DNA of 62,932 nt, filler included, from Hyphochytrium catenoides (GCA_900088475.1; 11 parts of 11 records of this genome joined end to end with filler, not necessarily neighbours in it), one strand, 5' to 3'. Numbered from the whole stretch's first letter, positions 37,543-52,191 are shown. Translations and numbers: made by a program. Notes: a model not told the origin generated them from the letters alone.

Positions 37543-37991
37543 NNNNNNNNNNNNNNNNNNNNNNNNNNNNNNNNNNNNNNNNNNNNTTAATTAATTAANN
37601 NNNNNNNNNNNNNNNNNNNNNNNNNNNNNNNNNNNNNNNNNNTTTGTCCTCGTAGTTCTATGGTACTGTGGTGAGGAAGGTGGAGAGGTACTCGTAGCAG
37701 AAAGCGTCAGCCAGAGGATGGGTGGGCACATGGGCGATTCTCACTTTTCGATTGCCAGACCCCAACGCATGAGTTCAAACCTCTGCTCGCCTCTCTCCCT
37801 CTTACCTCTCTCTTTCTGGATTCTTGTCTCTCTCTTCCATCTCTCTCTCACTCTCTCTCTCTCTCTCTGTCTCACGCTCTCTTTGTCTCTCCCTCTCTCT
37901 CAGAGTCTCTCTTTCTGTCTCTCTCTCTGTCGCTCTCTCTGTCGCTCTCTCTCTCTGTTTCTCCCACTCTCTCTCTCTCACTCTCTCTCGC

Positions 37992-38051
<60 letters not shown>

Positions 38052-39046
38052 CCTTTCTCTCTCTCCCTTTTTACAGCCAAGCACATACATTCGAAGATAG
38101 GAAGGGAAGAGACAAGAGGGCAGCCGCTACCGTTACAAAGGCGCCACCGGCACCTTGTGAATCCAGCATTCATGGCTCCAGAGCTACCCCAGGACATCTG
38201 GAACCACAAAGATCTGATGGGCATCCGAATCCCTACCTTTTAAAGGCCTTTATAGTGAGTGAGTGAGTGAGTGATAGCACAAAGGAAGCTGCCATCGGCC
38301 CGTGCCGTAGAAGACAGGAGACTATCAGAACGCCACGCGACGAAGAGTTCTTGTCTTGCTAGAAGCGCAGATCGGCACGAAAACGGCTCTTTTTAGTCGC
38401 TCAAGAGGCTCGTAGCTCCCAGCAACAGAGAGAAAGAGGAAGGAACAGCTTACAGAGGAGGTCAAGCGAGAGCCTCACCTCATCTCCACCCCCTCCACGA
38501 TAGTATCCCTTTCTCTCCTATCTCCTTAACCCCGCCGCCGTCTCTTGTTCACCGAGTAGCTCGTTCGTTCTTTGTTCCTCTCCAGTTCTTCATAGAACCG
38601 AACGCTGGGACTGGCAGGTCCCTTGTGCCCGTACCTCAAAATTGAGGCAAAGCATCTTCCTCCCTTCCATCCATCCATCACGTCGACCACCATGCCAGTG
38701 CGGTCGCTGTAAAATACAGTGAGAGAGGAAGACGGGTGGAGAAAGGCTTTTTCCACACGTGCTCTAAGGCAAGGCTCACACGCCACAAGGGATGCAACAA
38801 CAAGTGCTACTGCCCCCAGGCTGTTCCGCTGAGGTGCGTCGGAGAAAGAGGAAGTGGTGCTAGATAATCTGAGCACTATTAAGGAAAGAGCAGGGTAAAG
38901 GAGCATCGCAGGATGAGATTACAGGCAGCTACTGAAGCAGTGAGGGACAAGTGAAATGATCTGCCCGACGAGCAGCATCCTATCCCTGTCAGACAACAAA
39001 TAACAGAGCGACTGAGGCAAGCAACTTCTTACCTGGCTTCCTCTCC

Positions 39047-39841
39047 ATGCTCTCTCCTGTTGTTGTGAAGGGTTTGTCGCGAGCTCAAGCCCGGGAGATC
39101 CGCGAGCGGGAAGGTCCTCATAAGGTCTCGCCACCGCTGAACTGTCCTAGGCAAGGCTTTCTTCTCTCTTAAAGTGGTTCTTCGCAATGTCATGAAGTGG
39201 AACAGTTATTACCTTTTGCTTCCCTTGTCCCACATCATCTGACTCTATCCGCTCCTGGTCGGCTGATCCTTTTCTCTCTAGATGGCTATGTTGCATCCTT
39301 CCCTGTTTGACGCGCAACAAGGCAATGAGAGCGTATCATGACTGCTACCCAGTAGAAGCCCGCGTACTGCGGGAGGGTAAAGAGATCGTGATGGACCCGA
39401 GCAGCGTAGTGCGCGGAGATATTATTCTTCTTTCTCCTGGGGATGTTGTGCCAGCTGATATTCGGCTCATCGACGCCACGGAAGATCTTCTCGTGAGTCT
39501 ATCTTAGAACAGTGTTTCGCCCCTTCTTATTCCTCTCCTGCCTTCTTAGTTCTCGATTTTTTCGCCTCCTAGATCCTCAGCTCCTTATGACGCTAACTGC
39601 AGGCATTGTTGCTATGTAGGTCGATGTCTCTCCTTTAACAGAGGCTTCTCAGCCTCTCTATGGACGAGTGGGCATGGAGGTGTTAATGCCTTCTGTGGTG
39701 GAGCAAGGCAGTGGAAGAGGTGTGACGGTCCGGACAGGCAGACACACGCGCTGGAGTTATGCCATCAGTAAGGGAGAGTGGCCCAGACAGACCTTTGAGA
39801 GCCAGAATCAGCCGTTCCTCGGCATCAAGGAGAAAGCCTGA
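39047..39841 (+). CDS. P-type ATPase-derived protein of about 178 aa: cation-ATPase N-terminal motif + actuator domain only; exons 39047-39150, 39282-39492, 39620-39841
   Basis: GLSRAQAREIREREGPHKVSPP...; ARVLREGKEIVMDPSSVVRGDIILLSPGDVVPADIRLI; VDVSPLTEAS; VEQGSGRGVTVRTG; stop at 39839-41. One GC-AG and one GT-AG intron keep the frame; start codon uncertain. Confidence 0.75.
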
Positions 39842-41282
39842 TGAGGAGAGAACATCAAGAGATAAGGAGTATTGCCTGATTCGCCCTTCCACTCTCTGGT
39901 GTTTGGGGAAACATCCTGTGCCTGAGAAATCTCCTCAGTAATTGGAGTCAGGAGGGTCCCTCATTTGGCTCCCGCTCCTCTACGGACGGAAATGGTAATG
40001 GCGGGGCCGGATAGCTCACGTCGGCCCTTCGCAGATGGCTACTGGCAAGAGCTTGCAGCCAAATCAGCAGAGCTGGTGCGAGAGGTAGGGCAGCAGGCCG
40101 CTAGAGCTAGACAGGAAGCTGCTCATGCTCACGGACGCGCTCAGCAAACGGCTTTCTCTGTGCTTGTTCCACGTCCTCTTGGTGGCCCTCTGCTTCATGG
40201 CTATGGACGTAGACAAGAGTGTTAGCTCGCCTGAGCTGTCCTTCCCAGTTCTCTGCCTTACTTTCCACACACCCGCTTGACCCACGTATAACTTCGTCCC
40301 CGCCGAGAGTGGGGAGGGAGGGGGAAAGAAAACTCGTGGAATTGAGGGTATGTTGAAGCGTCAGCCTCTTATGCTAGTAGTAACTATTACATAAGCCTAA
40401 CGAGGGGTCATCTGTCATCTTGTCCTGCCAATCACTACCACGATACTACTTCTATCCTTCCGAGACAGCGCCTTGTAGGCTAATAGTGAGCAAGAAGCTC
40501 GTCTGTGAGTTCCCATCCATCTCCCTGCCATGCGAGCTCTTCGCCACTTCACAAACAAGCTCCTAGAAATTGTTGTCGGACAATTGTGCTCCCTTCTGCT
40601 GGTGAGCTCGAATGAGTATATGGGTCCAGAATATTCCCGTCCACAGAAGCTGAACTCGACAGAAATATATTTAAGCTAAATCCTTTCTCACCACCTTACT
40701 CTGACTGTTAGCCACATGTCCCAAGACCGGTATGAGCTGCTGCTTCTCCCTCTCAAAGGCTCGTTTTGGGAGCCTCCTCAGGTCTCTTGCGGTGATGCTT
40801 CCTAGACAGAGATCATCTCAAACTCAAAGAGCGTCCTATTCCATCCCTTTTCGAGGTATGCATCGCTCATAGCATGAAGGAACGTCTTTCTCATCGGAAA
40901 ATCATTCTCATCGGCGCTCTTCCTACTGATAACTCTCTGCAATCTTGTGGGGAGGATGACTACTGAGGAAGTTGAAAGGTTTAAGGAAACGAGGAAGTGC
41001 CCCTTACACCGCACCAACTTCTCCCTTCCTTACTTGCCCTTCCCATGCTCTCCAATATGCAAGTGCGCTCTCGCACCATATAGTTCCAGCAGATGGTGGC
41101 AAGGTCAAGGTGGGCAGCAGAACAGGTGATGAGTAACGGATGGAGCGCGATGATACAAGCGGCGCCATCCGCGGCCGGCCGGATTATTACGAGAAGAAAA
41201 AGCTTCAAACTCCGTGCAATCAAGCTTGGCCCAGTAAGTAGTAAAAAATAATGCCTTCAGGGCAAAAAGTTGAGAGCTTATC

Positions 41283-41355
41283 TGCTCGAACTGGGGATCG
41301 AACCCAGGACCTCCGGATTATGAGACCGACGCTCTACCAACTGAGCCATTCGAGC
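41283..41355 (-). tRNA. tRNA-Met (CAT), elongator type
   Basis: GCTCGAATGGCTCAGTTGGTAGAGCGTCGGTCTCATAATCCGGAGGTCCTGGGTTCGATCCCCAGTTCGAGCA folds as a cloverleaf; G1-C72, U31-U39, GTTCG T-loop; no intron. Confidence 0.96.
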
Positions 41356-41819
41356 CCTCAAGTTGGAATCTTAAAGCAAAGTTTTATCCTTGAACCAGAA
41401 GTCCGTAGTAGTCGTTACCGGCGCTCAAAGGACAGCTTCAACTTCGCCAACGAACATCATCTCCTTTCCTTCCTTCTCTCCCTTCCCTGACCGCGCTCCC
41501 ACATCCTCCTCCCCCCTCGGCTCAACACGCCACTCGTATCTTCCCCATCAACGCAACGCTGCGGTGAAGGACCTTGCGATCCTTTGCTAAAGGATATGAC
41601 GCTGCTGCGACGGTCTGGTCGGCTGCCTATCTCCTTTCTCTATCGTATAAGGGCCGCTCGTCTATACACTCTGTCGGGCCTTGTCCAGGCCTCCTTCGGT
41701 TCACAAACCCGCTGGAGAGTTGATATATAGAGGAAGATATAGAGAGACAACAAAGCGGAAGATCAAAGAGGGTAAAGAAGGTAAGGGGACGGGAGGAAAG
41801 CTGAGCGGACGGACGGAAG

Positions 41820-43766
41820 ATGGCATTTAAGACCCCAAGTCTTTCCTCGGCACTCTTCTCTCTCGCAGTGTTATTTTCGCTCTCCCTCTCGCTAGCCTTG
41901 GAGCACAGTGCCTCCTCTTACTATGAGCACGCAGTCTCTCTTCTCGATAAAGGCGACCTTCTCGCCGCTATCTCAGCTTTCCAACAAGTCAAGATCTTAG
42001 AACAGCATCCCTCTCCGGAGACAGAGTTTAGCTTGGCGTGGACGTTCAGCCAGCTGGAAGGAGAGACAGAGAAAGAAAGAGCCATAGAACACTATCGCCG
42101 TGCCTTACGCATTGATCCGGGTCACTGGCGAAGCTCCTATAATCTCGCGTTCCTTCTTTGCGAGCGAGGAGAGTACAATGCTTCTCTCTCGCTGTACCAA
42201 CACGCCACGTGGATGGCGCCACACATGGAGGAAATAGCTAGCGATAGATGCTACTGCGTTTCTCAGGCACGCGGAGAGATAGCGGCAATAGAATGCATCA
42301 ACGAGGCATTAGGACAGAACCCAAACTCCCTCATGCTCAAAGCAAACTTAGGCGTTTTGCTCATGGAGAGTGGCGGTGCGCTAAGTCGAGAGGGAGAGCC
42401 CATGGCAGAGAGGCTGCTGAGAGATGCATGTGCTCGAGGTGGTGAGTCAGAGTTCTGCTACTCTCTTGGCATCTGCATACAGAACTACGGCTGTCATGTC
42501 GGAGAAAGAGAAGTCCAGGCGTACGGATGGGACTCCTCCTGCAGCCCGTCTCTCTTCTTTGAGCGAGCTCAAAACGCATTCACGCAGAGATTCCTACAGC
42601 AAGGAAAGCCTCTCAGAATCGTCTACGACCCGCAAAAGGAGATAGACATTGAGACGAAGGAGCTTTTTTCTTGGCACCCACGCCTATTCACTGAGGAGTT
42701 CTATGAGGTCACTGAGGATGGAATTTCTTTCAAACGAGAACTCCACGTGGAGAATGGGCCGATCTTCCGCTTTGAGGTGACGAATGTGACGATAGTAGGT
42801 AATTATAGAGAAGCAATGGCTTATGATGCTGCCGGACATAGAGTGTTCTCTCTTCTCCACGGCGTCTCCCTGCCAGTCCATCGCGTCCCCTTCCAAAAGG
42901 CTAGCCAGCGGACTACACTACTCTCGAGGTGCGCCACTATTCTCCAGACAGCCCGAAAGAACTACTATCACAATCTCTTCGAGATGCTTCCCAGGCTTTA
43001 CCTTCTCCGCTCTCTTCTGTTGCAAGACATCGCACTTTCTCTCCTTCTCCCTGCGGAGAACAAGCCCTTCTGGACCTTCGTATTGCGCACCTTGGGCCTA
43101 GAGAGCCTCTTGAAAGAGAATCGGGTGCACTACTTCGACGGGAGTGTCGCATACCAGGTGGAAAGGCTTATCCTCGTCGACTGGCAGCGGACAGTAGTGA
43201 AGTCCCTCTACCAGCGGCAACACACGGCGGAGATTTTCCTTCCTCCTCGCGTCCTACTGGAGAACGTCCGGAGCTCCTTCACTCCCGTCGGCCTCCCTCA
43301 ACCTGCCAGGAACCTTGTGATATGGGTATCTCGTAGCAAGGACGCGAAAAGCAGGAAGGCCGTAAATGAGGCTGAGGTGATAGAAACGGTTAGAACATCT
43401 CTCTGTCCTGGGGAGGAGCTGGTTGTCTTCGACTCTTCTGACTACAGCCCTCACAAGGCTGCCCTGTTATTTCAAAGAGCAGCGACCATTGTGGCGGTGC
43501 ACGGAGCTGGCTTGGCAAATATGATGTTCGCCTCAGCCGGGGCACTAGTGGTAGAGATTGCGTTACATGAGGGCAATCATCGGATGTTCTACCTCCACAG
43601 TGCGGCTGCGCTCAGGCACAAGATGGTGGTAGTCAACGGCACCCAAAGCGGGCAGTTCTCCTCAGACATCAAGGTTCCGCTTACAGGATTGACGGCTGCG
43701 TTGAGGTCATTCAAGACTTGTGGACTGAACCAGCGAGGGAGCGGGGCGATAGCTGAAGTATCATAG
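41820..43766 (+). CDS. Signal peptide + TPR repeats + glycosyltransferase family 61 (DUF563) domain; intronless
   Basis: Hydrophobic N-terminus; TPRs (AIEHYRRALRIDPGHWRSSYNLA); GT61 motifs NYYHNLFEMLPRL, WVSR...SRKAVNEAEV, LFQRAATIVAVHGAGLANMMF...VVEI. Confidence 0.92.
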   Translation: MAFKTPSLSSALFSLAVLFSLSLSLALEHSASSYYEHAVSLLDKGDLLAAISAFQQVKILEQHPSPETEFSLAWTFSQLEGETEKERAIEHYRRALRIDPGHWRSSYNLAFLLCERGEYNASLSLYQHATWMAPHMEEIASDRCYCVSQARGEIAAIECINEALGQNPNSLMLKANLGVLLMESGGALSREGEPMAERLLRDACARGGESEFCYSLGICIQNYGCHVGEREVQAYGWDSSCSPSLFFERAQNAFTQRFLQQGKPLRIVYDPQKEIDIETKELFSWHPRLFTEEFYEVTEDGISFKRELHVENGPIFRFEVTNVTIVGNYREAMAYDAAGHRVFSLLHGVSLPVHRVPFQKASQRTTLLSRCATILQTARKNYYHNLFEMLPRLYLLRSLLLQDIALSLLLPAENKPFWTFVLRTLGLESLLKENRVHYFDGSVAYQVERLILVDWQRTVVKSLYQRQHTAEIFLPPRVLLENVRSSFTPVGLPQPARNLVIWVSRSKDAKSRKAVNEAEVIETVRTSLCPGEELVVFDSSDYSPHKAALLFQRAATIVAVHGAGLANMMFASAGALVVEIALHEGNHRMFYLHSAAALRHKMVVVNGTQSGQFSSDIKVPLTGLTAALRSFKTCGLNQRGSGAIAEVS

Positions 43767-45174
43767 TGCTAGGGTGAGGGGCGAGGATCTTGAGAGGGTA
43801 ATGGATAGGGTGAAAAGCCTATATGAGGACAAGCAGCGAAGAGGTAGTAGGGACAGGATAAAGAAGATGGGCCTGAGCCAAGTCAGAGATGTTTAGATGA
43901 GATATAGAAGAAGTGTATGTAAAAGAGATGGTGTTTGTCTGCAACTCCATCCTTCCAGTCGCTCTTGCGACCAACTGCTGCCATTCAGCGGAGCTAAACC
44001 CCTGCCGTCATGATGACCCGGTATCTAAGAATATTCTGAACGAGCTTGCTCCTCTTAGCGGCGTCAGTGCTAAGAAGTCCGTCGATCTCGGTGGACTGTG
44101 GCTCAGTGCTAGTCCTTATTTACTCTACTGAGTACAGATAGGACAGGTTGTTAGGGCTGGAGAAGAGACATTAGGTTTCACTCTCTCGTCCTCTTTTTCT
44201 TGTACCTTTGGCATCATAGCTCCTGCAGTTATTCCTGAGTAACCTTCCCTCTCCTGCTTTGACGATTCCCTTGCTTTTCCTTCTCCTTAATTCACGAAGG
44301 TCGATCTGCTGTGTCCCTCTTCTTTCCAGAAAGAGGGCTCCAGCCCTCTTCTTCACTTCTCTTTCGTTCTCAGAATAAAACAACGACTTGTCGTCTCTGT
44401 CAGCCATACATATAATTATAGGCGCCTGACCCTCTGCGTACCTCCTTCCCGGTGGCGGTGCTCGTGCTTGCAGGTCCCCTTGCCCTTCTCGTTGGTGATG
44501 AGCCTTTTGGTTTCTTTCCTTCATTTTCACTCCCTTTCGATGATCCAGGTTTTCCTTTCATTTCTTTCAACCCATCAATCATCTCTCCGTCTGCAGCCTT
44601 GCCCCAGCGTCTTCTTGGATTGCTGGTCTTACGCCCTCACCACCAACAGTTAGTACTCTTCTAACCACTACTGCCCCCATCACCTTTCCATATCCATCAA
44701 GGAATAGAGCCATCAATCTGCTCGCTGGCAGCAAGGCGGTGTTAGTGTCACCAGAATTAGAGTGCGGCGGCATTGCGCCACGAGAAGGCCCGGGACAGAG
44801 GACATTGGGTCAAGCGAATGAAGTTTATTGTTTACCTAGGTCAATGGTCTTTGAAGCAGCAGCAGGATGAGGAATCAGGACTGCTAATGACAAGCCGGAA
44901 ATTTCTCAGAATGATTCTTCTCAACTTCTCTTCTACATCTTGATCCTTCTTCCTTCTCCTCCTTCTGTCGCCTTATTTCTCTGCCCGCAACCGCTTTGAC
45001 TCTGGTCTCAGCCACCATCACCTCACCACCATGCATATTCTTGCGGCTGACCCATCATACTGCCAGGCCATACCTGCTGCTGCTTGTTGCGGTTGTCTTT
45101 AAGCGCACACCCACCTCCTGTCTCATGATGCGGCTCCCTCTCGGACGTCTTCTATTGTCCTTCATAGCAATAGT

Positions 45175-45295
45175 AAGAAGGGAGAACTGGCAGGACAAGA
45201 AGAGAATGGGCCGGGGAGTGCTACAGAAGAAAGGGAAAGGACCAAAACCTCCCCACCAGCCCTTTCTCTTCTTGTCCTGCCAGTTCTCCCTTCTT
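45175..45295. repeat. Perfect 32-bp inverted repeat (arms 45175-45206 and 45264-45295, 57-nt spacer)
   Basis: AAGAAGGGAGAACTGGCAGGACAAGAAGAGAA and its exact reverse complement. Confidence 0.9.
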
Positions 45296-47911
45296 TTCAA
45301 CTCTGGAATATTATTAGAGGTTGGGAACTAGGAATCTCCCCTCCTTCGGTTCAGTACTTTCCTCCTTCCTGCTACTGCTGGTGCCTCTGCCACCACCAGC
45401 TGCACTACCTACAGCCGTCGTTCAGTCTCTAGGAATAATATTGGTCTGCTGCTCTCCTCCCTAATGAGTTGTCTGGATCTTCCTCCGTTTCGCTTACAAG
45501 GAAGCTTCCTTAGTTGTCCGTGGATGATTGCGTGTTGTGTGTGATCAAGTTGATGGAGGTGAGCTACTCTTCTCCTAGCCCACTCCCACCGTGGGGCGAC
45601 CCCCAGTGCCCNNNNNNNNNNNNNNNNNNNNNNNCCCCCCATTATTTTTTTCCTTTTCTCTTCTTCTTCCTTCTTCTCTAACTTTGTTTCTCCAAGAACA
45701 ACAATTGTCCCTCCTTCTTCTGGATACTTCTTCTACGATGTGATCAAATGCTGGCCGCTCCACAGCAGCAGCAGCAGAGTCGATGACAAGTAGCGGTTTG
45801 TGGTGGAGGACGGGAAGGGAGGAGGGTTGTTCCTCCACCACCAGCTTGATAAGAAGTGGAAGAAGAAGAAGAATAATGCTCTGGAGTAGTCTCTTGCCTA
45901 CTAAGAAGAGAGCAATCAAACCGACAGGACAGACGACGACAGCCACGGGGGAAAGTTCCTGTTCCTCACCCGCTTCAAAGATAAGAGAACTAGCAGAGGA
46001 TGGACGAGGAAACGACAAGCAACAACAGTGTCATTGTGAAGTGGAGTGAGGAAGAAGTATAAAGGGCGAAAGATGATGAGCCTCCTTCCTGGTCATGGAC
46101 TTCACGTCTTTTCCTCCTCCGAGCTAGACTGTATGTAGCCTCCTCTTCCTCCTCCTCAGTTGGTCCTTCCCAGGCCTTTAAAGAGCCGGCACTCATCCTC
46201 CCTGCACCTACTCCTCCTGTGCCTGTGTCAAGCCTCCCACCTCAAGCCCACTCCAATCCCCATCCTCTTATCGCGTCAGTATCCATCCTCTGTCTTTTGG
46301 TCCTCGCTCAATCCTGCCATCAATGTAGGATCTCCTCTCTTCTGCTTCCGCTCTCTAGTCATCCCTATCTTTCTATTACACCACTGTCGATAAATAGCAT
46401 GATGCTAGCTAAACATTTCTTCTTCCTCTTTACGAGTACAGCCACCGGTCACCTGGCTCTTCACCTGGTGTCCAACTCCCTACCCTTTCTTGTTCTCTCT
46501 GTTCATCACTCCTCTCCGTCTTATTACCGCATTTGTTTGTGGAAGAAGTGAGTAGTAGGATTGGTGTATCATCTTATCCAGTACTGCCTCGCTTCCACGA
46601 GTATCTCCATAATAGATACTAATAATCCTCCGTGGCACCGCACCACTGCCCACCGTCACACCAGTATCATCTCCATCTTCTAGCCCTTCCTTCTCTGTTT
46701 CTCACGCTGTACTTCCTCTTTTTAGAAAATAAACCAAGGACTGCGGAGGGCAGTAGGAGGCGATGATGAGAAGGGAAAGGGGGAGAGGGGAAGAGTTAGC
46801 TGGAATGACGCGGAGTTGGCTCTTCCATCATCATACAATTTGCTACGTATTGAACCTGGATCCTTCCCTGTCCCTGCAACTCATCATCGTTGACAGGAAG
46901 CCCTGACGAAGAGAAAAAGAAGGTTCCCCGTTCACTTCTACCTTCTTCTTCTTCCCACACTTTGCTGCTGTACTTCATCTGCCGCCCCCTTTTTCTCACA
47001 TTCTTCCCTCAAGAGGGCTCACCACCATGATGGTGTCTTTCTGTACCTTCGTGGTTCCCTCACCACCGAGGATCAGCAGCAGCAGCTTCATTCTAAATAA
47101 TATGGTCACTGAAAAGATTAGTCACGATCGTACTGCTGCTTCGTCTCCTGAGAGTTGCCCTCTCGTTTCTGCTTCCATCGGCGGTGTGTTGAAGAGAAGG
47201 AACTTGATTTTCATCTCTGAGCGTTTAACCTATTACTATTGGGAGGCGAGACGGCCAGGAGGAGAAGAGAAGTTCCTCAACAAGTGACCCTGTCAAGTCA
47301 ATGGTGTTAGTGGTGTAGGATCAGATCATCAACACAGTCTCAGAAAAGAGCTAGTTCCTCTCCTCTGATTGTTAGGTTGTACATCATGATGATTTTTTAT
47401 GACTTAGAGCAGCAGTATGACTGTCCAGCAGCGTTGCCTACAATCACGCTTTTCTCTCCACCCGCAGCTGTGCTACACCGCTGGATAAAGAAGATATTCT
47501 TCACAGGCTGCGATCTTATTCCATCTGTAGGAACTGACAACTTCTTTCCTCGCTCAATCTTCCTTCTGGTGCATATTCTCTCGTCTGACTCCACACTGGT
47601 CCTCCTCCTTCCGCTGCTCTAAAGCTTCTCCCACCGTATCCCATGCTCTTCTTTCCTTCTTTCCCTTGAGAAGGCGACCCTTGATGCGGCACCTAGTAGC
47701 TTGCTCTTTGGGCCAGTTCTCGGTCTCCTTCGTTGTTCACAACATCTTTCGCTATGCGTAGGAGCATTAATCGGACACCTCATCATCACCGCCGGCGATC
47801 CGCCTCCTTGACTTAATATAACTCCCTGCCTCGCGCTCTGCTGCAAAGAGGATTAAGAGGAACCCAATAAAGAAAGGCGAGGGCCTAGAAAGATTGAAAA
47901 CAGCCACAGGG

Positions 47912-50020
47912 ATGGCAGGCGATCTACTCGGGCCGTCCGAACGGCTTTCTAATGCAGTACTGGTCCCCGAGCCACATTCCGTCACCCTTCCCTCCTGCCG
48001 TCAAGCCGTAAACCCTGTTCTGCCTCCTCCCACCTTCATTGCATCACCCTCTAAGAGCCCCGAAGCCGATGTGGGAGAGAAGGGCCAAGAAGAGCTGGGA
48101 GGAGACATTTATCACATCTCCTTCAATCCCCAGCAGGGCGTTCCTAACCTCTTCACAAGGCGATTCCTCGGCATCCTGGCGGAATATCTTCTTTGGGGCT
48201 TGGTGTACGGAACGACGACCTCCATTCTCTACCCAGTCCTTGTCGTGAAGAATCTGGAGGAACCCAACTTCCTGACTGCGGCCTATGCAATGGTGATGAT
48301 CTTCTATACCTATAAAGTGTTCTACGGACTGCTGGCCGACTGCGTTCCCATTGCAGGCATGAAGCGCAAGCCGTATATTATTCTAGGTTGGCTCCTGTCG
48401 GCCGGGTTGTTCATGGGCCTGGCTCTGCAAGGAAAAGATGTTTCGTCAGTGTCTCTGGTGCTCTTTCTGGCCCTCGCAAACTTCGCTTACGTTCTCTCTG
48501 ATACTGTGTCGGATGGTATGGTGGTGTGGATTGCCCACCGAGAGCCACTGGAGAAGAGAGGAAAGGCTCAGACTTTGGTATATCTCTTTCTTATGGCTGG
48601 CCGGACCTTGGGGGCTCTATTGGTTGGCTTTTTTTTCTCTGGTCCCACGACCACCTGCCCAGGATACGAACCAGATCCTACCCAGCCCTGCACCAGCGAC
48701 CGCTCCATCATTCAGAGAACCGAATGGGGACGCCTTCCTCCATCTCGTCTCCCTTTTGACTGGTGCCACCGTGTCTGTAGCAGTGCTCTTTTTACTTTCG
48801 AGATATCTCTCTCCCAGTTGGCCTGGATACTAGCTGCAACTCAGCTCATGCTACTGCCGTCTTTCTACTTCTTCATCTATGATGAACCCGCCGTAAGAAA
48901 GAAAGTCAAAGACGTACTTCAAGGCTTCTGGGATGCCCTGCAACGACGAGCAGTGTGGCAACTGTCGTTTTACCTCCTCTTCTCTCATCTTCTCTTTGGC
49001 ATCACCAACAATGCGCAGACAAATACTCTGCACATCTGGCTGCGTCTCTCTCCTTTGCAAAAGAGTCTTCTGGATGTCTTCGAGAACCTGATCTTCATTT
49101 CCGGCATACTTCTAATCCGCCAATACTTCTTGAATGTCAGCTGGCACCGACTGGTGATTGTTGGCTCCCTTCTCCAGGTTTCTCTGTCGTCCCTCTATCT
49201 CCTTATTGTGTTCAAGATTTGGCGAAACCCATGGTTCTACATCGTATCAGATGTCTCGGTCACCTTTACTGGTACTCTCAACCACATGGTTGGCACGTTG
49301 TGCATTGCTGAGGTCTGCCCACAAGGCTATGAGGCAGCAGGCTACGCGATGGTTAGTGCCGCTAACAATCTCGTCCGCCCTCTTTCGGCTGTCCTCTCTA
49401 ATCAAGTCTCTTCCCTCTTTTCCCTCTCAAACGCTGATTTGAGGCGAGACGATAAAGATGTGCATATGCAGTACTTCTATTGCTGGTTGCTCACTGTGGC
49501 CATCAACCTTTCCAGTCTTCTGGTACTTCCTCTACTGCCGAACCAAAAAAAGGAGGCCAGGGAGCTCTATGCAAGTGGAGATTCGTCTTCCTTCTGGCGG
49601 ATGGTTCTCCTCTCCTCGTATGCGGTTTGTATGGTGTACGGGACAGTCTCAAACCTTCTCGCCCTCTTTCCTGAGATCAAGTGCCATAAAGTGCTTGGAG
49701 GGAGCGGATGTGTCTCATCTTCCCAGCACCAAACCGGAGTAGCAAAGGGAGGAGAGGGAGGAGGGGCAATGTCATCGCCTTCTTCTTCACAGTCTTCCAC
49801 ACCGTCTTCCTCTGCCGTCAGGCCAAGCATCGCCACGCCCCCTCCCGCGGTAGTTGCAGCTGAGTCTAACCTGGGAGTCGGGATCCTACTGGCTGTGGTG
49901 TTCACCTTTATCGTTCTCTGCACGTTGGCACTGGGCTACCGCCAGCATCTATCAAGAGCTTATCGGTGGCTAAGGACCAGGACTAGGAGAAGCACTCCTT
50001 CTTCAAGTGGAACCCAATAA
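47912..50020 (+). CDS. BT1 / folate-biopterin transporter family (MFS); intronless
   Basis: YKVFYGLLADCVPIAGMKRKPYIILGW, DTVSDGMVV...REPLEKRGKAQT, RNPWFY, AEVCPQGYEAAGYAMV, LPLLPNQK; 12 or more hydrophobic segments. Confidence 0.93.
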   Translation: MAGDLLGPSERLSNAVLVPEPHSVTLPSCRQAVNPVLPPPTFIASPSKSPEADVGEKGQEELGGDIYHISFNPQQGVPNLFTRRFLGILAEYLLWGLVYGTTTSILYPVLVVKNLEEPNFLTAAYAMVMIFYTYKVFYGLLADCVPIAGMKRKPYIILGWLLSAGLFMGLALQGKDVSSVSLVLFLALANFAYVLSDTVSDGMVVWIAHREPLEKRGKAQTLVYLFLMAGRTLGALLVGFFFSGPTTTCPGYEPDPTQPCTSDRSIIQRTEWGRLPPSRLPFDWCHRVCSSALFTFEISLSQLAWILAATQLMLLPSFYFFIYDEPAVRKKVKDVLQGFWDALQRRAVWQLSFYLLFSHLLFGITNNAQTNTLHIWLRLSPLQKSLLDVFENLIFISGILLIRQYFLNVSWHRLVIVGSLLQVSLSSLYLLIVFKIWRNPWFYIVSDVSVTFTGTLNHMVGTLCIAEVCPQGYEAAGYAMVSAANNLVRPLSAVLSNQVSSLFSLSNADLRRDDKDVHMQYFYCWLLTVAINLSSLLVLPLLPNQKKEARELYASGDSSSFWRMVLLSSYAVCMVYGTVSNLLALFPEIKCHKVLGGSGCVSSSQHQTGVAKGGEGGGAMSSPSSSQSSTPSSSAVRPSIATPPPAVVAAESNLGVGILLAVVFTFIVLCTLALGYRQHLSRAYRWLRTRTRRSTPSSSGTQ

Positions 50021-50781
50021 TTAGTAGCGCGGAAATAGTGGTAATTCTTCTAAAGGAGGAAGTTGCTGCGAATCAGAGATATGCATTTAGAGAGGAGTGA
50101 ACTGGACAAATAACTTCGCTCATATACCGTCCCACCGAACACAGTTCAATAACTTCTAGTTCTTCTCTCTTGAGGGGTCGCCGAAGAAAGCAACTTGAAA
50201 GATTCAATCATCGACGTAAACCACCCTTCATACGAAACTACTACAAGCTCTATTGAGGGCTAAGACAAAATGAAGGCAAATCGTAAAAGCGAATAAATGG
50301 CCTATTCCACCAAGGCAAATAATAATCCATACGTGATTGTCTTACGGGGCGGAGTCCGCTATTTCTTCTATCCAAATCCCTTCTCACAAAACAACTAAAA
50401 GCTTGCCCTGCCCTAAACGCCCAAGAGTTGTTCACTTGGACTTCCGCAGGTCAACTTTTAGTTAAGATAAGTGAGAGTTGGTGCCAAGGGGTTATTTGAC
50501 GCAGGAAAGCTAATGACGCGAGCATAATTTGCGAGTTCAATGCCAATCATTGCGAATTTGATTTTCCCACGAGGGTGTGAACTTGAGACAACTCGAGTTT
50601 TCGCGCCAACTGTCAAGCGATCGCACATTATGTAGTTGTCGCCTTCCTTGTAGCTCCATATATCTGCCAGCTTCACTTTCTTGGAGGCGTAAACCTTTTT
50701 CCATCGCTGCGTGATCGCTTTCGAAGAAACTCTCGTCGTCGGCGCCTTGCGCGGTTGGGCTTATTACTTCGCTCCTTCAAA

Positions 50782-52049
50782 ATGCCTTCGTCGTACGAGT
50801 ACTGGTGGGAATCTCAGAGGAAGAGTGGTGGGCCCATAACCTGATGAATTTTACAGAGATGGGTGGCAATGCCTGAAGCCTCTGTATGAGCACAATCTAG
50901 ATGCAATGATAACAAAGGGACTTGGTATTGATGTTTGTGGAGATTTCTCTGAATCGTGACTCAGTCCTGAGAGCCTGGTGTGGACTCGAGATCTTTTGCT
51001 CGGCCCAGCTTCCCTCANNNNNNNNNNNNNNNNNNNNNNNNNNNNNNNNNNNNNNNNNNNNNNNNNNGGTGTACCCGTAACGTCTATGTCCCTGAGAGCT
51101 AGGTGTGTATAGAGAGTGACTACTGTACTAATGACAACGAACAGTAGCACTCAACAGGAAGACCCCCATAAAGTCCTCCTTGGAGGAAAGCTTAAGCGGC
51201 CGCGACTGCAGGCGTTACACTCTGGCAAATTCTGGCGCTGTGAGGTGACCTATTATCCTAGATCGGGGACCAAGGGTGAGCGAAGATGGAGTTCAACGCA
51301 TCGCTCACGAGAAGAAGCTGCTGTAGCTATGGAGAGCTTTTTAGAGACTTTCAACGTTCCTAGGAGGCTACCCTCGGGCACAACGAGAGCTTCAATCCCT
51401 CCTCGTCCGTCTTTAAGGGAAACAGCCATCGGACGGAAGAAGACGGCTGATGTTGCCAGAGAGGCTGCTACCACGTCGGCTGTCTTTGCCACGAAACCGA
51501 CAGTATCGAAGCCGGATGCCTACAAAAGAGTGAAAAGGGAGCTGAGATGGCCTCGATTGACTTTGCTACATTATTGGCAGACCCATAAGGACTTAAAGCA
51601 CGTACGGAAGCTGGAAGATATTCCCAGGCGTAGACTACGGCTCCATTGTGAGTTCGGAGCAGGAGGTTCTACGCTGGCGGCGCTGAGCAGTGTCGAGTTG
51701 GATCACTTGCGCTATCTGATGTTAAAGGCGGACCTCCTGCGACGACAAAGGGCAGAAGATGCGAAGCACAAAGCTGAGGAACTGATGAGCCGCGCAACAA
51801 GTAAGCGGCAAAGCCTACGAACTCCTTCTTATCAGCGCGGAATCAAACGAGGAGGGAGACGCGATGCGGTATTGGTTCAAATACGGGCGAGATTCAAGCC
51901 CTTCAGGAGATGATAATACTAATAAGAAAAGTGAGTGCCTTTGTGGGGTTCCTTCTGACGCCGCCAGTCCCACTCAACTACAACGGGTCGCTCTCCAGGC
52001 AACGCTGGTAGCTCAACTACCATGGGAAATTGCCACTGTTGAACTGTGA
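50782..52049 (+). pseudogene. ORF with N-terminal AP2-like DNA-binding motif, interrupted after codon 10 by an LTR insertion; probably transposon-borne
   Basis: Removing 50812-51156 and one GGAA copy restores MPSSYEYWWEDPHKVLLGGKLKRP...; contains GKFWRCEVTYY...RRWSSTHRSREEAAVAMESF; frame break near 51900. Confidence 0.55.
50842..51156 (-). mobile_element. LTR family A copy (Copia-type PBS adjacent), internal N gap
   Basis: Minus strand starts TGTTGAGTGCTAC and ends TTCATCA, followed by GGTTATGGGCCC; homologous to 57637-57980 and 54043-54244. Confidence 0.9.
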
Positions 52050-52191
52050 TCGACGCTGAAACCAAAAAGTGTACAGCGGATGACGCAGAGGNNNNNNNNN
52101 NNNNNNNNNNNNNNNNNNNNNNNNNNNNNNNNNNNTTAATTAATTAANNNNNNNNNNNNNNNNNNNNNNNNNNNNNNNNNNNNNNNNNNNN

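What the first reader, a model, noticed from the sequence alone, without database searches (positions are those of the whole stretch)
39047..39841. Stand-alone P-type ATPase actuator-domain protein: no TM helices, no P/N domain, TGES replaced by TEAS
Seen: a three-exon frame with no internal stops encodes the cation-ATPase N-terminal helix motif joined directly to the A domain. The TM1-TM2 hairpin is replaced by a short Cys-rich segment (CPRWLCCILPCL), the TGES phosphatase loop reads LTEAS, and the protein stops (KGEWPR...KEKA*) where TM3 should start. No DKTGT exon is visible downstream on this contig. Precise removal of the membrane hairpin with intact splicing fits an evolved small protein better than random decay. 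Inference: a possibly S-acylated peripheral regulator or decoy of P2-type pumps; I know of no described protein of this kind.
Basis: partly seen in the sequence, partly recalled or inferred. Interest (0 to 1): 0.72.

Follow-up and report, generated by a model that had tools for sequence, protein, structure and literature searches.

The report
Free-standing sodium-pump actuator-domain protein
This gene encodes a small protein made only of the "actuator" domain of a sodium-pump-type ATPase, with the membrane hairpin swapped for a short cysteine-rich stretch; it belongs to a conserved, expressed and apparently unstudied protein family found across stramenopiles (diatoms, golden and brown-lineage algae, water moulds).

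Summary
Exons 39047-39150, 39282-39492 and 39620-39841 (+) give an open 178-aa frame: the N-terminal helix of a Na,K-ATPase-type (P2C) pump, a CPRWLCCILPCL stretch, then the A-domain barrel, with a stop about 20 residues after GEWP.

It is not a decayed fragment. An exhaustive protein search with exon 2 returned mostly short proteins (88-330 aa) among its best hits. They share the CPxW-CCLLPC motif, the missing M1-M2 hairpin and the end after WP. Named members are all stramenopiles: diatoms, raphidophytes, pelagophytes, a chrysophyte, a labyrinthulid and oomycetes. Several are complete ORFs in MMETSP transcriptomes. The Hondaea gene is one intronless ORF. Three close orthologues give dN/dS 0.11-0.13.

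The window protein scores 175 bits (E 6e-56) against the family profile, and homology confirms both splice junctions. No P/N-domain or membrane exon lies elsewhere in the 14.4-kb piece.

The catalytic Glu of TGES is not conserved in the family, so this is a non-catalytic domain paralogue. Tethering by a lipidated or hydrophobic M1-remnant helix, and action on pumps, are inferred only. No RNA data exist for this organism, and I found no paper describing the family.

The parts
39047..39150 (+).
   Evidence: Translation. All 15 PDB hits are Na,K/H,K-ATPase alpha at the homologous place. Family profile hit E 2.4e-7 on this stop-to-stop piece.
39151..39281 (+). Intron 1, 131 nt, GC-AG (donor AG|GCAAGG, pyrimidine-rich 3' end)
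   Evidence: The junction rebuilds CP-R-WLCC with exactly one residue between P and W, as in the family consensus cP.W.CCLLPC.
39282..39492 (+). Coding exon 2: Cys-rich M1 remnant, M2-stalk remnant (TRNKAMRAYHDC) and first half of the A-domain barrel (GD...GDVVPAD)
   Evidence: Pfam E1-E2_ATPase 38.5 bits. Na,K-ATPase alpha3 145-198. Family profile 102 bits.
39143..39309 (+). Family hallmark motif CPRWLCCILPCL (codons 39143-39150 and 39282-39309, split by intron 1); it stands where M1-M2 lies in pumps
   Evidence: W[LVIM]CC[LI]LP[CW][LI] is present in most of the short hits. The C, C, L, P, C columns are 93-100% conserved in 181 relatives. Predicted as a helix with lower pLDDT (about 80) in the P0018 model.
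39493..39619 (+). Intron 2, 127 nt, GT-AG
   Evidence: The junction TEDLL|VDVSPLT aligns almost without gap (one position) to the family profile.
39620..39841 (+). Coding exon 3: second half of the A-domain barrel, last helix, GEWP, 18-residue tail, stop TGA (39839-39841) followed by a second TGA
   Evidence: Pfam E1-E2_ATPase E 0.018. Family profile E 4e-8. WP lies 121 residues after CC, as in the relatives (120-135).
39638..39649 (+). TEAS at the TGES (dephosphorylation loop) position; 39642 A>G (Glu to Gly, giving TGAS) is seen in one contig of run X1
   Evidence: In the family this site reads T 105, G 151, E 56, S 15 of 181.
39779..39784 (+). WP, the family's C-terminal hallmark just before the point where M3 would begin
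   Evidence: P about 90% conserved; W more than 50% conserved across the 181 rows and nearly invariant in the 26-member alignment A1.
38913..38939 (+). Possible alternative first coding exon (MRLQAATEA). It would be spliced by a 131-nt GT-AG intron (38940-39070) onto 39071 (GLSRAQ...). Under this model the ATG at 39047 lies in the pyrimidine tract of that intron.
   Evidence: 178.4 vs 175.6 bits against the family profile. The intron has the same length as intron 1. Not decidable without RNA.

Best explanation
This is a real protein-coding gene for a member of a conserved family of small proteins (about 170-330 aa) that arose from a Na,K-ATPase-type (P2C) pump gene, probably early in the stramenopiles.

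Shown. The family keeps only the two pieces that form the actuator (A) domain: the N-terminal helical segment and the M2-M3 loop barrel. The roughly 55-60 residues of the M1-M2 membrane hairpin are replaced by an almost invariant CPxW-CCLLPC-L stretch. The protein ends just after a conserved WP, where M3 would start. It has no phosphorylation (P), nucleotide-binding (N) or membrane domain, so it cannot pump. The Glu of the TGES loop is not conserved, so it is a non-catalytic domain paralogue.

Inferred mechanism. The Cys-rich hydrophobic helix is the interfacial start of M1. It acts as an in-plane, probably multiply S-acylated, membrane anchor that holds the A domain at the cytoplasmic membrane face in the same geometry as in a pump. 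From there the protein acts through protein-protein contacts. The most plausible target is the P/N headpiece of P2-type pumps, on which it would act as a trans modulator or brake. Alternatively it is a membrane scaffold that has taken on another partner.

The confidence given is for the shown part (real gene, member of this family, not a pump). The inferred anchoring and the pump-directed action are much less certain.
For: Architecture and origin:
- for the window copy.
- The family profile A1 matches Na,K-ATPase alpha at E 1.7e-36 in two stretches (profile 8-58 = alpha3 30-80; 66-183 = alpha3 143-260). This leaves alpha3 81-142 replaced by 7 profile positions. The next subfamilies are far weaker: MgtA 2e-22, SERCA 4e-21.
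- AlphaFold2 model of member P0018: pLDDT 89, pTM 0.85. Its best Foldseek matches are sodium and proton pumps, TMq 0.68-0.72.

Family reality:
- The exhaustive HMMER search with exon 2 gave 799 hits. The best roughly 110 are nearly all short proteins aligned from query residue 1.
- The motif is present in most of them.
- 201 proteins hit the profile in the word search. Named species are Heterosigma, Fibrocapsa, Thalassiosira, Stephanodiscus, Epithemia, Chromulina, Chrysophaeum, Aureoumbra, Hondaea, Pythium, Globisporangium and Lagenidium.
- MMETSP transcripts are marked 'type:complete'.
- The Hondaea gene is one intronless 320-aa ORF, and the Pythium core lies in one exon.
- dN/dS is 0.11-0.13 among three orthologues.
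- The tree largely follows stramenopile classes.

This copy:
- 175 bits, E 6e-56 against a profile built without it.
- It keeps 16/18 columns conserved at 90% or more, but only 8/48 of the least conserved columns.
- Splice junctions are validated by homology.
- DNA contigs of two runs confirm the frame, with 2 synonymous and 1 non-synonymous difference.
- No TM segment. No further pump exon in the piece.
Against: - No RNA data exist for this organism. Expression, the GC-AG intron, and the 5' and 3' ends of this copy are unverified.
- The copy is among the most divergent members: branch 1.17 against a median of 0.25, and third lowest of 181 in keeping conserved columns. Relaxed constraint or recent inactivation cannot be excluded.
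- Nothing here tests S-acylation, membrane binding or any partner. Four Cys in a short stretch could also bind a metal.
- A free domain would have to compete with a pump's own covalently attached A domain. That argues against simple competitive inhibition.
Confidence: 0.8

Rival explanations
1. This particular copy is a recently inactivated or decaying member of the family (a unitary or duplicate pseudogene) that still happens to have an open frame.
For: Long terminal branch of 1.17. Only 26/31 of the columns conserved at 80% or more are kept, third lowest of 181. Losses include the near-invariant Asn (now His), the Gly of TG (now Glu) and another Gly (now Pro). Exon 3 alone is barely recognised by Pfam or PDB searches. 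There is no expression evidence.
Against: The 537-nt frame is open across three exons, with intact splice signals and a double stop. Substitutions are concentrated in the family's variable columns: 89% identity to consensus in the most conserved class against 17% in the least. Two of three coding differences between assemblies are synonymous, and no indel lies in the CDS, while one indel and six substitutions lie in the flanks and intron. The sequence still scores E 6e-56 end to end.
Confidence: 0.12
2. The three exons are the 5' part of an ordinary full-length P-type pump gene whose later exons were missed.
For: Only about 12 kb downstream is available. The stop could in principle be bypassed by an unseen donor.
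Against: There is no P-, N- or membrane-domain similarity anywhere in 37643-52091 on either strand, using five pumps that carry DKTGT (four of them also GDG) and the family profile. A tRNA-Met gene and an unrelated GT61 gene follow. The M1-M2 hairpin is missing inside exon 2, which would disable any pump. More than 180 relatives end at the same point, including an intronless ORF.
Confidence: 0.02
3. The family is real but does not act on pumps. The lipid- or helix-anchored A-domain barrel has been re-used as a membrane scaffold or adaptor for an unrelated partner. One example would be another HAD-fold phosphatase, since the pump P domain has that fold. Alternatively the Cys cluster binds a metal.
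For: The catalytic Glu and Ser of TGES are free to vary: E in 56 and S in 15 of 181. The strongest family-specific constraint lies in the Cys-rich helix and the C-terminal WP, not in the pump-contact loop. Diatom members carry an extra acidic tail with a conserved EE-G-[IV]-S-L motif, which suggests other interactions. No conserved gene neighbourhood with pumps was seen.
Against: [VIL]-T-G and a Pro five residues later (as in TGESEP) are still kept in most members. This suggests that the loop which docks on the phosphorylation site retains its shape. The only known function of this fold is within pumps (textbook knowledge).
Confidence: 0.3

Closest known systems
A (actuator) domain of Na+,K+-/H+,K+-ATPase alpha subunits (P2C P-type ATPases)
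   Same: Clear sequence homology of both halves of the domain: the N-terminal GL...G.N..PP..P.W helix, and the barrel with GD...GD.VPAD, TG and G..T. Same predicted fold.
   Different: No M1-M2 hairpin, no M3-M10, no P domain (DKTGT) and no N domain. The Glu/Ser of TGES are not conserved. There is a family-specific CCLLPC motif and a WP end. It is a separate gene product of about 180-330 aa.
Database entries of the same family, e.g. Hondaea fermentalgiana GBG29915.1 ('Sodium/potassium-transporting ATPase subunit alpha-1'), UniProt 'P-type ATPase A domain-containing protein' of Pythium oligandrum, Aureoumbra, Chrysophaeum and Stephanodiscus, and Fibrocapsa A0A7S2USP6
   Same: Same architecture, motif and end point. 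33-48% identity to the window protein.
   Different: The window copy is more divergent (CCILPC, TE for TG, His for the conserved Asn), has a short TGES-distal loop and has its own intron positions. None of these entries carries a curated function.
Small stand-alone homologues of a pump domain: Atx1/CopZ copper chaperones versus the N-terminal metal-binding domains of P1B ATPases (from general knowledge, not tested here)
   Same: Precedent for a pump's cytoplasmic domain existing as a separate small protein that interacts with the pump.
   Different: A different domain and fold, a soluble protein, and a known ligand (Cu). No such precedent is known to me for the A domain.
Multiply palmitoylated cysteine clusters of peripheral membrane proteins (SNAP-25, cysteine-string protein, GAP-43) (from general knowledge, not tested here)
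   Same: Several Cys embedded in a short hydrophobic stretch of a protein that has no TM helix.
   Different: No sequence homology. Acylation of CCLLPC is only inferred.
Single-pass pump regulators phospholamban, sarcolipin and FXYD proteins (from general knowledge)
   Same: Small proteins that modulate P2 pumps; this is the functional analogy proposed.
   Different: Those are TM peptides that bind the membrane domain. This protein is a cytoplasmic-domain paralogue without a TM helix.

Membership tests
Stramenopile short A-domain proteins with the CCLLPC motif (unnamed family defined here) | N-terminal pump helix with GL ... G.N..pP..cP.W | tested here: met
   GLSRAQAREIREREGPHKVSPPLNCPRW is present. 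The only deviation is His for the 97%-conserved Asn.
Stramenopile short A-domain proteins with the CCLLPC motif (unnamed family defined here) | CPxW-CCLLPC-[LI] in place of the M1-M2 hairpin | tested here: met
   CPRWLCCILPCL. The Ile-for-Leu variant also occurs in P0012, P0029, P0091 and P0122. The gap against Na,K-ATPase is about 55 residues.
Stramenopile short A-domain proteins with the CCLLPC motif (unnamed family defined here) | A-domain barrel followed by ...lI....WP and an end before M3 | tested here: met
   AISKGEWPR plus 17 residues, then the stop. WP lies 121 residues after CC, against a family range of about 120-135.
Stramenopile short A-domain proteins with the CCLLPC motif (unnamed family defined here) | Full-length match to a family profile built without the candidate | tested here: met
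   175.6 bits, E 6e-56, profile positions 31-207 of 227.
Stramenopile short A-domain proteins with the CCLLPC motif (unnamed family defined here) | Host is a stramenopile | tested here: inconclusive
   The organism is coded. The candidate groups weakly with the oomycete and labyrinthulid members. The nearest Atlas clusters of the neighbouring BT1 transporter are Oomycota. No close proteome is in the databases.
Functional P-type ATPase (pump), subfamily P2C | Phosphorylated Asp in DKTGT (P domain) and an N domain | tested here: not met
   Absent from the protein and from the whole 14.4-kb piece.
Functional P-type ATPase (pump), subfamily P2C | Membrane domain (M1-M10) | tested here: not met
   No hydrophobic segment of TM length; maximum KD19 is 1.16. 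M1-M2 are deleted and the protein ends before M3.
Functional P-type ATPase (pump), subfamily P2C | TGES dephosphorylation loop in the A domain | tested here: not met
   It reads TEAS (TGAS in one contig). In the family, Glu is kept in only 56 of 181.
Pfam PF00122 E1-E2_ATPase (A-domain region) | Score above the gathering threshold | tested here: met
   Exon 2 alone scores 38.5 bits against a cut-off of 28.1. Exon 3 adds 15 bits.
S-acylated peripheral membrane proteins | Thioester-linked fatty acid on the Cys cluster; membrane association dependent on it | not testable with these tools
   Only the sequence context (four Cys in a hydrophobic, Pro-flanked stretch, with no TM helix) is available.

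The most novel reading that the evidence does not exclude
Stramenopiles carry a dedicated, lipid-anchored, catalytically dead copy of the pump actuator domain. It docks in trans on the P/N headpiece of Na+/K+-type (or other P2) pumps and sets their activity. This would be a mode of P-type ATPase regulation by a domain mimic, with no described counterpart in animals, plants or fungi.
Probability: 0.25. Interest if true: 0.85.

Novelty: new variant of a known kind. Interest (0 to 1): 0.66.

Why it matters
P-type pumps are among the best studied membrane enzymes. Their A domain is known only as a part of the pump that is mechanically coupled to M1-M3. Here the A domain has been cut out precisely, given what looks like a lipid or in-plane anchor, and then kept under purifying selection across diatoms, other ochrophytes, labyrinthulids and oomycetes. 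That is unexpected.

The family is directly testable in tractable organisms such as Phaeodactylum, Thalassiosira and Phytophthora. If it acts on pumps, it would be a new principle of pump regulation in ecologically and agriculturally important organisms. If it does not, it shows that the A-domain fold can serve another function.

It also corrects database labels. Several members are named 'Na+/K+-ATPase alpha-1' or 'magnesium-transporting ATPase', although they cannot transport anything.

Tried and rejected
- RNA evidence: the look-up of sequencing runs gave only DNA-type contig runs of the same organism, and no RNA run. Read laying was used only to confirm the DNA.
- Organism identification failed. 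The exact look-up of the neighbouring GT61 protein found nothing. Its word search found only TPR look-alikes at 27-30% identity. The only lead is the Oomycota-like BT1 neighbour.
- The joined 178-aa protein has no reference. I did not type it into any remote tool. Remote searches used the exons separately or family members. The joined protein was analysed only in local scripts. Its own structure was therefore not predicted; member P0018 was folded instead.
- P0008 and P0113, long proteins with 6-7 'stretches', turned out to be unrelated tandem-repeat proteins and were dropped.
- Search for an upstream exon encoding the poorly conserved first roughly 30 family positions: nothing significant. 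Only the short alternative exon emerged.
- Conserved gene neighbourhood: none between Pythium, Hondaea, the freshwater contigs and this window.
- dN/dS for the window copy itself is not possible. The nearest relative is at most 48% identical, and only over a fragment.
- Literature: five searches and two papers checked. None mentions a free-standing A domain or the CCLLPC motif. The library is partial, so this is absence in that library only.

Full report
**What is in the sequence.** The piece (37643-52091) is eukaryotic DNA of about 51% G+C with CT microsatellites.
- exon 1, 39047-39150
- exon 2, 39282-39492
- exon 3, 39620-39841

They are joined by a 131-nt GC-AG intron and a 127-nt GT-AG intron. 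Together they give a 537-nt open frame of 178 aa that ends in TGA TGA.

Exon 2 passes the Pfam gathering score for E1-E2_ATPase (38.5 against 28.1 bits). Exon 3 continues the same model weakly. Against solved structures, the best matches of exon 2, and all 15 of exon 1, are Na,K- or H,K-ATPase alpha chains:
- exon 1 residues 7-34 match alpha3 residues 50-77
- exon 2 residues 12-65 match alpha3 residues 145-198

Thirteen residues of the candidate therefore stand where 68 residues stand in the pump. The M1-M2 hairpin is missing, and CPRWLCCILPCL is there instead. No 19-residue window is hydrophobic enough for a TM helix (maximum 1.16). LTEAS occupies the TGES position. The protein stops about 20 residues after GEWP, which is where M3 would begin.

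**Is it the start of a larger pump gene?** No. Five pump proteins that carry DKTGT (four of them also GDG) hit only exons 1 and 2 in the whole piece, on both strands (tblastn, E up to 1). A profile of the short family hits only the three exons. Downstream lie a tRNA-Met gene (41283-41355, minus strand) and an unrelated GT61/TPR gene.

**The decisive result: a large family of short relatives.** The exhaustive HMMER search of 1.84 billion representative proteins with exon 2 gave 799 hits. The best 110 or so are almost all short proteins of 88-330 aa that align from the first residue of the query, so they include the Cys-rich junction. Ordinary pumps appear only from E of about 1e-6.

The retrieved sequences share these features:
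- GL...G.N..pP..CPxW-CCLLPC-[LI]
- a short M2-stalk remnant
- the A-domain barrel
- ...lI....WP, followed by the end, or in one subgroup by an acidic tail

A profile of 26 complete members (A1) found 201 proteins in the word-indexed database. The named ones come from:
- raphidophytes: Heterosigma, Fibrocapsa
- diatoms: Thalassiosira, Stephanodiscus, Epithemia
- a chrysophyte: Chromulina
- pelagophytes: Chrysophaeum, Aureoumbra
- a labyrinthulid: Hondaea
- oomycetes: Pythium oligandrum, Globisporangium ultimum, Lagenidium giganteum

All of these are stramenopiles. An ESM-Atlas cluster of 57 such proteins is mostly Oomycota.

Several members are MMETSP transcripts called as complete ORFs, so the short form is expressed. 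The Hondaea gene is a single intronless 320-aa ORF, and the Pythium core lies in one exon. The truncated architecture is therefore encoded as such and is not a gene-model artefact. Three close orthologues on freshwater metagenome contigs give dN/dS of 0.11-0.13. A FastTree of 182 members largely follows stramenopile classes, which fits old vertical inheritance.

**Origin of the family.** Profile A1 matches Na,K-ATPase alpha chains at E 1.7e-36, in two separate stretches: profile 8-58 with alpha3 30-80, and profile 66-183 with alpha3 143-260. Alpha3 residues 81-142 are thus replaced by seven profile positions. The next subfamilies score far lower: MgtA 2e-22, plasma-membrane H+-ATPase 2e-21, SERCA 4e-21. 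The family therefore derives from a P2C-type pump.

An AlphaFold2 model of member P0018 is confident (pLDDT 89, pTM 0.85). It shows the N-terminal helices, a helix over WLCCLLPCL with somewhat lower confidence, and the barrel. Its best Foldseek matches are sodium and proton pumps, TMq 0.68-0.72.

**Is the window copy a good member?** Yes, but it is a divergent one.
- Against a profile built without it, the joined protein scores 175.6 bits (E 6e-56) over positions 31-207 of 227.
- Both splice junctions are confirmed by homology. CP-R-WLCC has the single residue the consensus requires, and TEDLL|VDVS aligns with a single one-position gap.
- Agreement with the family consensus falls steadily with column conservation. 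It is 16/18 at 90% or more, 10/13 at 80-90%, 20/33 at 50-80%, 16/51 at 30-50% and 8/48 below 30%. That is the signature of selection rather than uniform decay.
- On the other side, it keeps only 26 of the 31 best-conserved columns, third lowest of 181, and sits on a long branch of 1.17.
- DNA contigs of two runs of the same organism reproduce the locus. Differences from the window are two synonymous sites (39363, 39483), one intronic site, five flanking sites and one flanking 1-nt deletion.
- One further A>G difference at 39642 changes TEAS to TGAS, the family's usual TG. It is seen in a single 61-nt contig of one run.

I put the chance that this copy is an inactive relic at about 0.12. The 5' end is open. 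A 27-nt exon (38913-38939, MRLQAATEA) with a 131-nt GT-AG intron ending at 39070 fits slightly better than the ATG at 39047.

**How it probably works.** Shown:
- It is an A domain without any part that could bind ATP, be phosphorylated or cross the membrane.
- At the TGES site the family keeps [VIL]-T-G and often the Pro of TGESEP. Glu is kept in only 56 of 181 members and Ser in 15 of 181. The water-activating residue of the dephosphorylation step is therefore dispensable.
- The strongest family-specific constraints are the Cys-rich helix and the terminal WP.

Inferred from textbook pump structure: the retained P.W... stretch corresponds to the interfacial beginning of M1, and the following residues correspond to the cytoplasmic end of M2. 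A hydrophobic, Pro-flanked helix with four Cys in a protein without a TM helix is the typical context of multiple S-acylation. So the protein is most likely held flat on the cytoplasmic face of a membrane, with its A domain in pump-like orientation.

What it does there is open. The leading idea is docking on the P/N headpiece of P2 pumps as a non-catalytic modulator. I give that about one chance in four as stated in the novel case. The main alternative is a scaffold for another partner. None of this was testable here.

**Known or new.** Members are in public databases under automatic or misleading names. Five full-text searches, two papers on P-type ATPase and Na,K-ATPase evolution, and a search for the motif itself found no description of a free-standing A domain. 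I rate it a new variant of a known kind: a pump-domain paralogue family that is real, conserved and uncharacterised. The window adds a divergent member from an unidentified, probably heterotrophic, stramenopile-like organism.

**Limits.**
- No RNA data exist for this organism.
- The joined protein could be analysed only locally, because it has no reference.
- The organism is not identified.
- The FastTree has weak deep support.
- The absence from the literature holds only for the library that was searched.

Noticed in passing
window 39642: A>G difference in one 61-nt contig (depth 8.6) of run X1 changes the Glu of TEAS to Gly. This restores the family's usual TG. It may be an allele of a diploid, or a strain difference.
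   Followed up: partly
   Followed up: partly
window 41283-41355 (-): tRNA-Met (CAT) gene between the A-domain gene and the next protein gene.
   Followed up: no
window 41820-43766 (+): Intronless 648-aa ORF with a signal-peptide-like start, TPR repeats and a glycosyltransferase-61 domain. There is no close relative in the 5.8-billion-protein word search (only TPR hits at 27-30% identity), so the organism's lineage is poorly sampled.
   Followed up: partly
window 47894-50020 (+): 708-aa ORF of the BT1 (folate/biopterin transporter) family. Its nearest ESM-Atlas clusters are oomycete BT1 proteins (score 0.98-0.99), a lead to the host lineage.
   Followed up: partly
window 45175-45295: Inverted repeat with 40-nt arms, 95% complementary, 41 nt apart, in an otherwise unassigned region.
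   Followed up: no
window 37800-38105: About 300 nt of CT-rich microsatellite or degenerate 8-14-nt repeat, 1 kb upstream of the gene. ORFs listed there are artefacts of the repeat.
   Followed up: no
window about 45600 and about 51070: Runs of N (read as X in ORF translations), i.e. assembly gaps inside the piece.
   Followed up: no
family members P0055, P0086, P0102, P0117 and others (23 of 182): A subgroup that includes the named diatom sequences carries an acidic C-terminal tail ending in a conserved EE-x-G-[IV]-S-L-[IL]-x-R-like motif after WP/FP. This may be a sorting or interaction signal. The named diatom sequences fall into both halves of that subgroup, which may mean two paralogues.
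   Followed up: partly
L003 1667-2266, L004 433-1032, L005 1573-2172: Three freshwater-metagenome orthologues (199 aa, intronless). L003 and L004 have a SANT_DAMP1-like gene downstream on the minus strand; the corresponding L005 gene touches the contig end and has no Pfam record. dN/dS is 0.11-0.13.
   Followed up: yes
ESM Atlas clusters: Bacterial (mostly Bacillota) clusters of 193-241-aa proteins with Cation_ATPase_N plus E1-E2_ATPase also exist. Whether they are truncated pump genes that retain M1-M2 or independent short forms was not examined.
   Followed up: no
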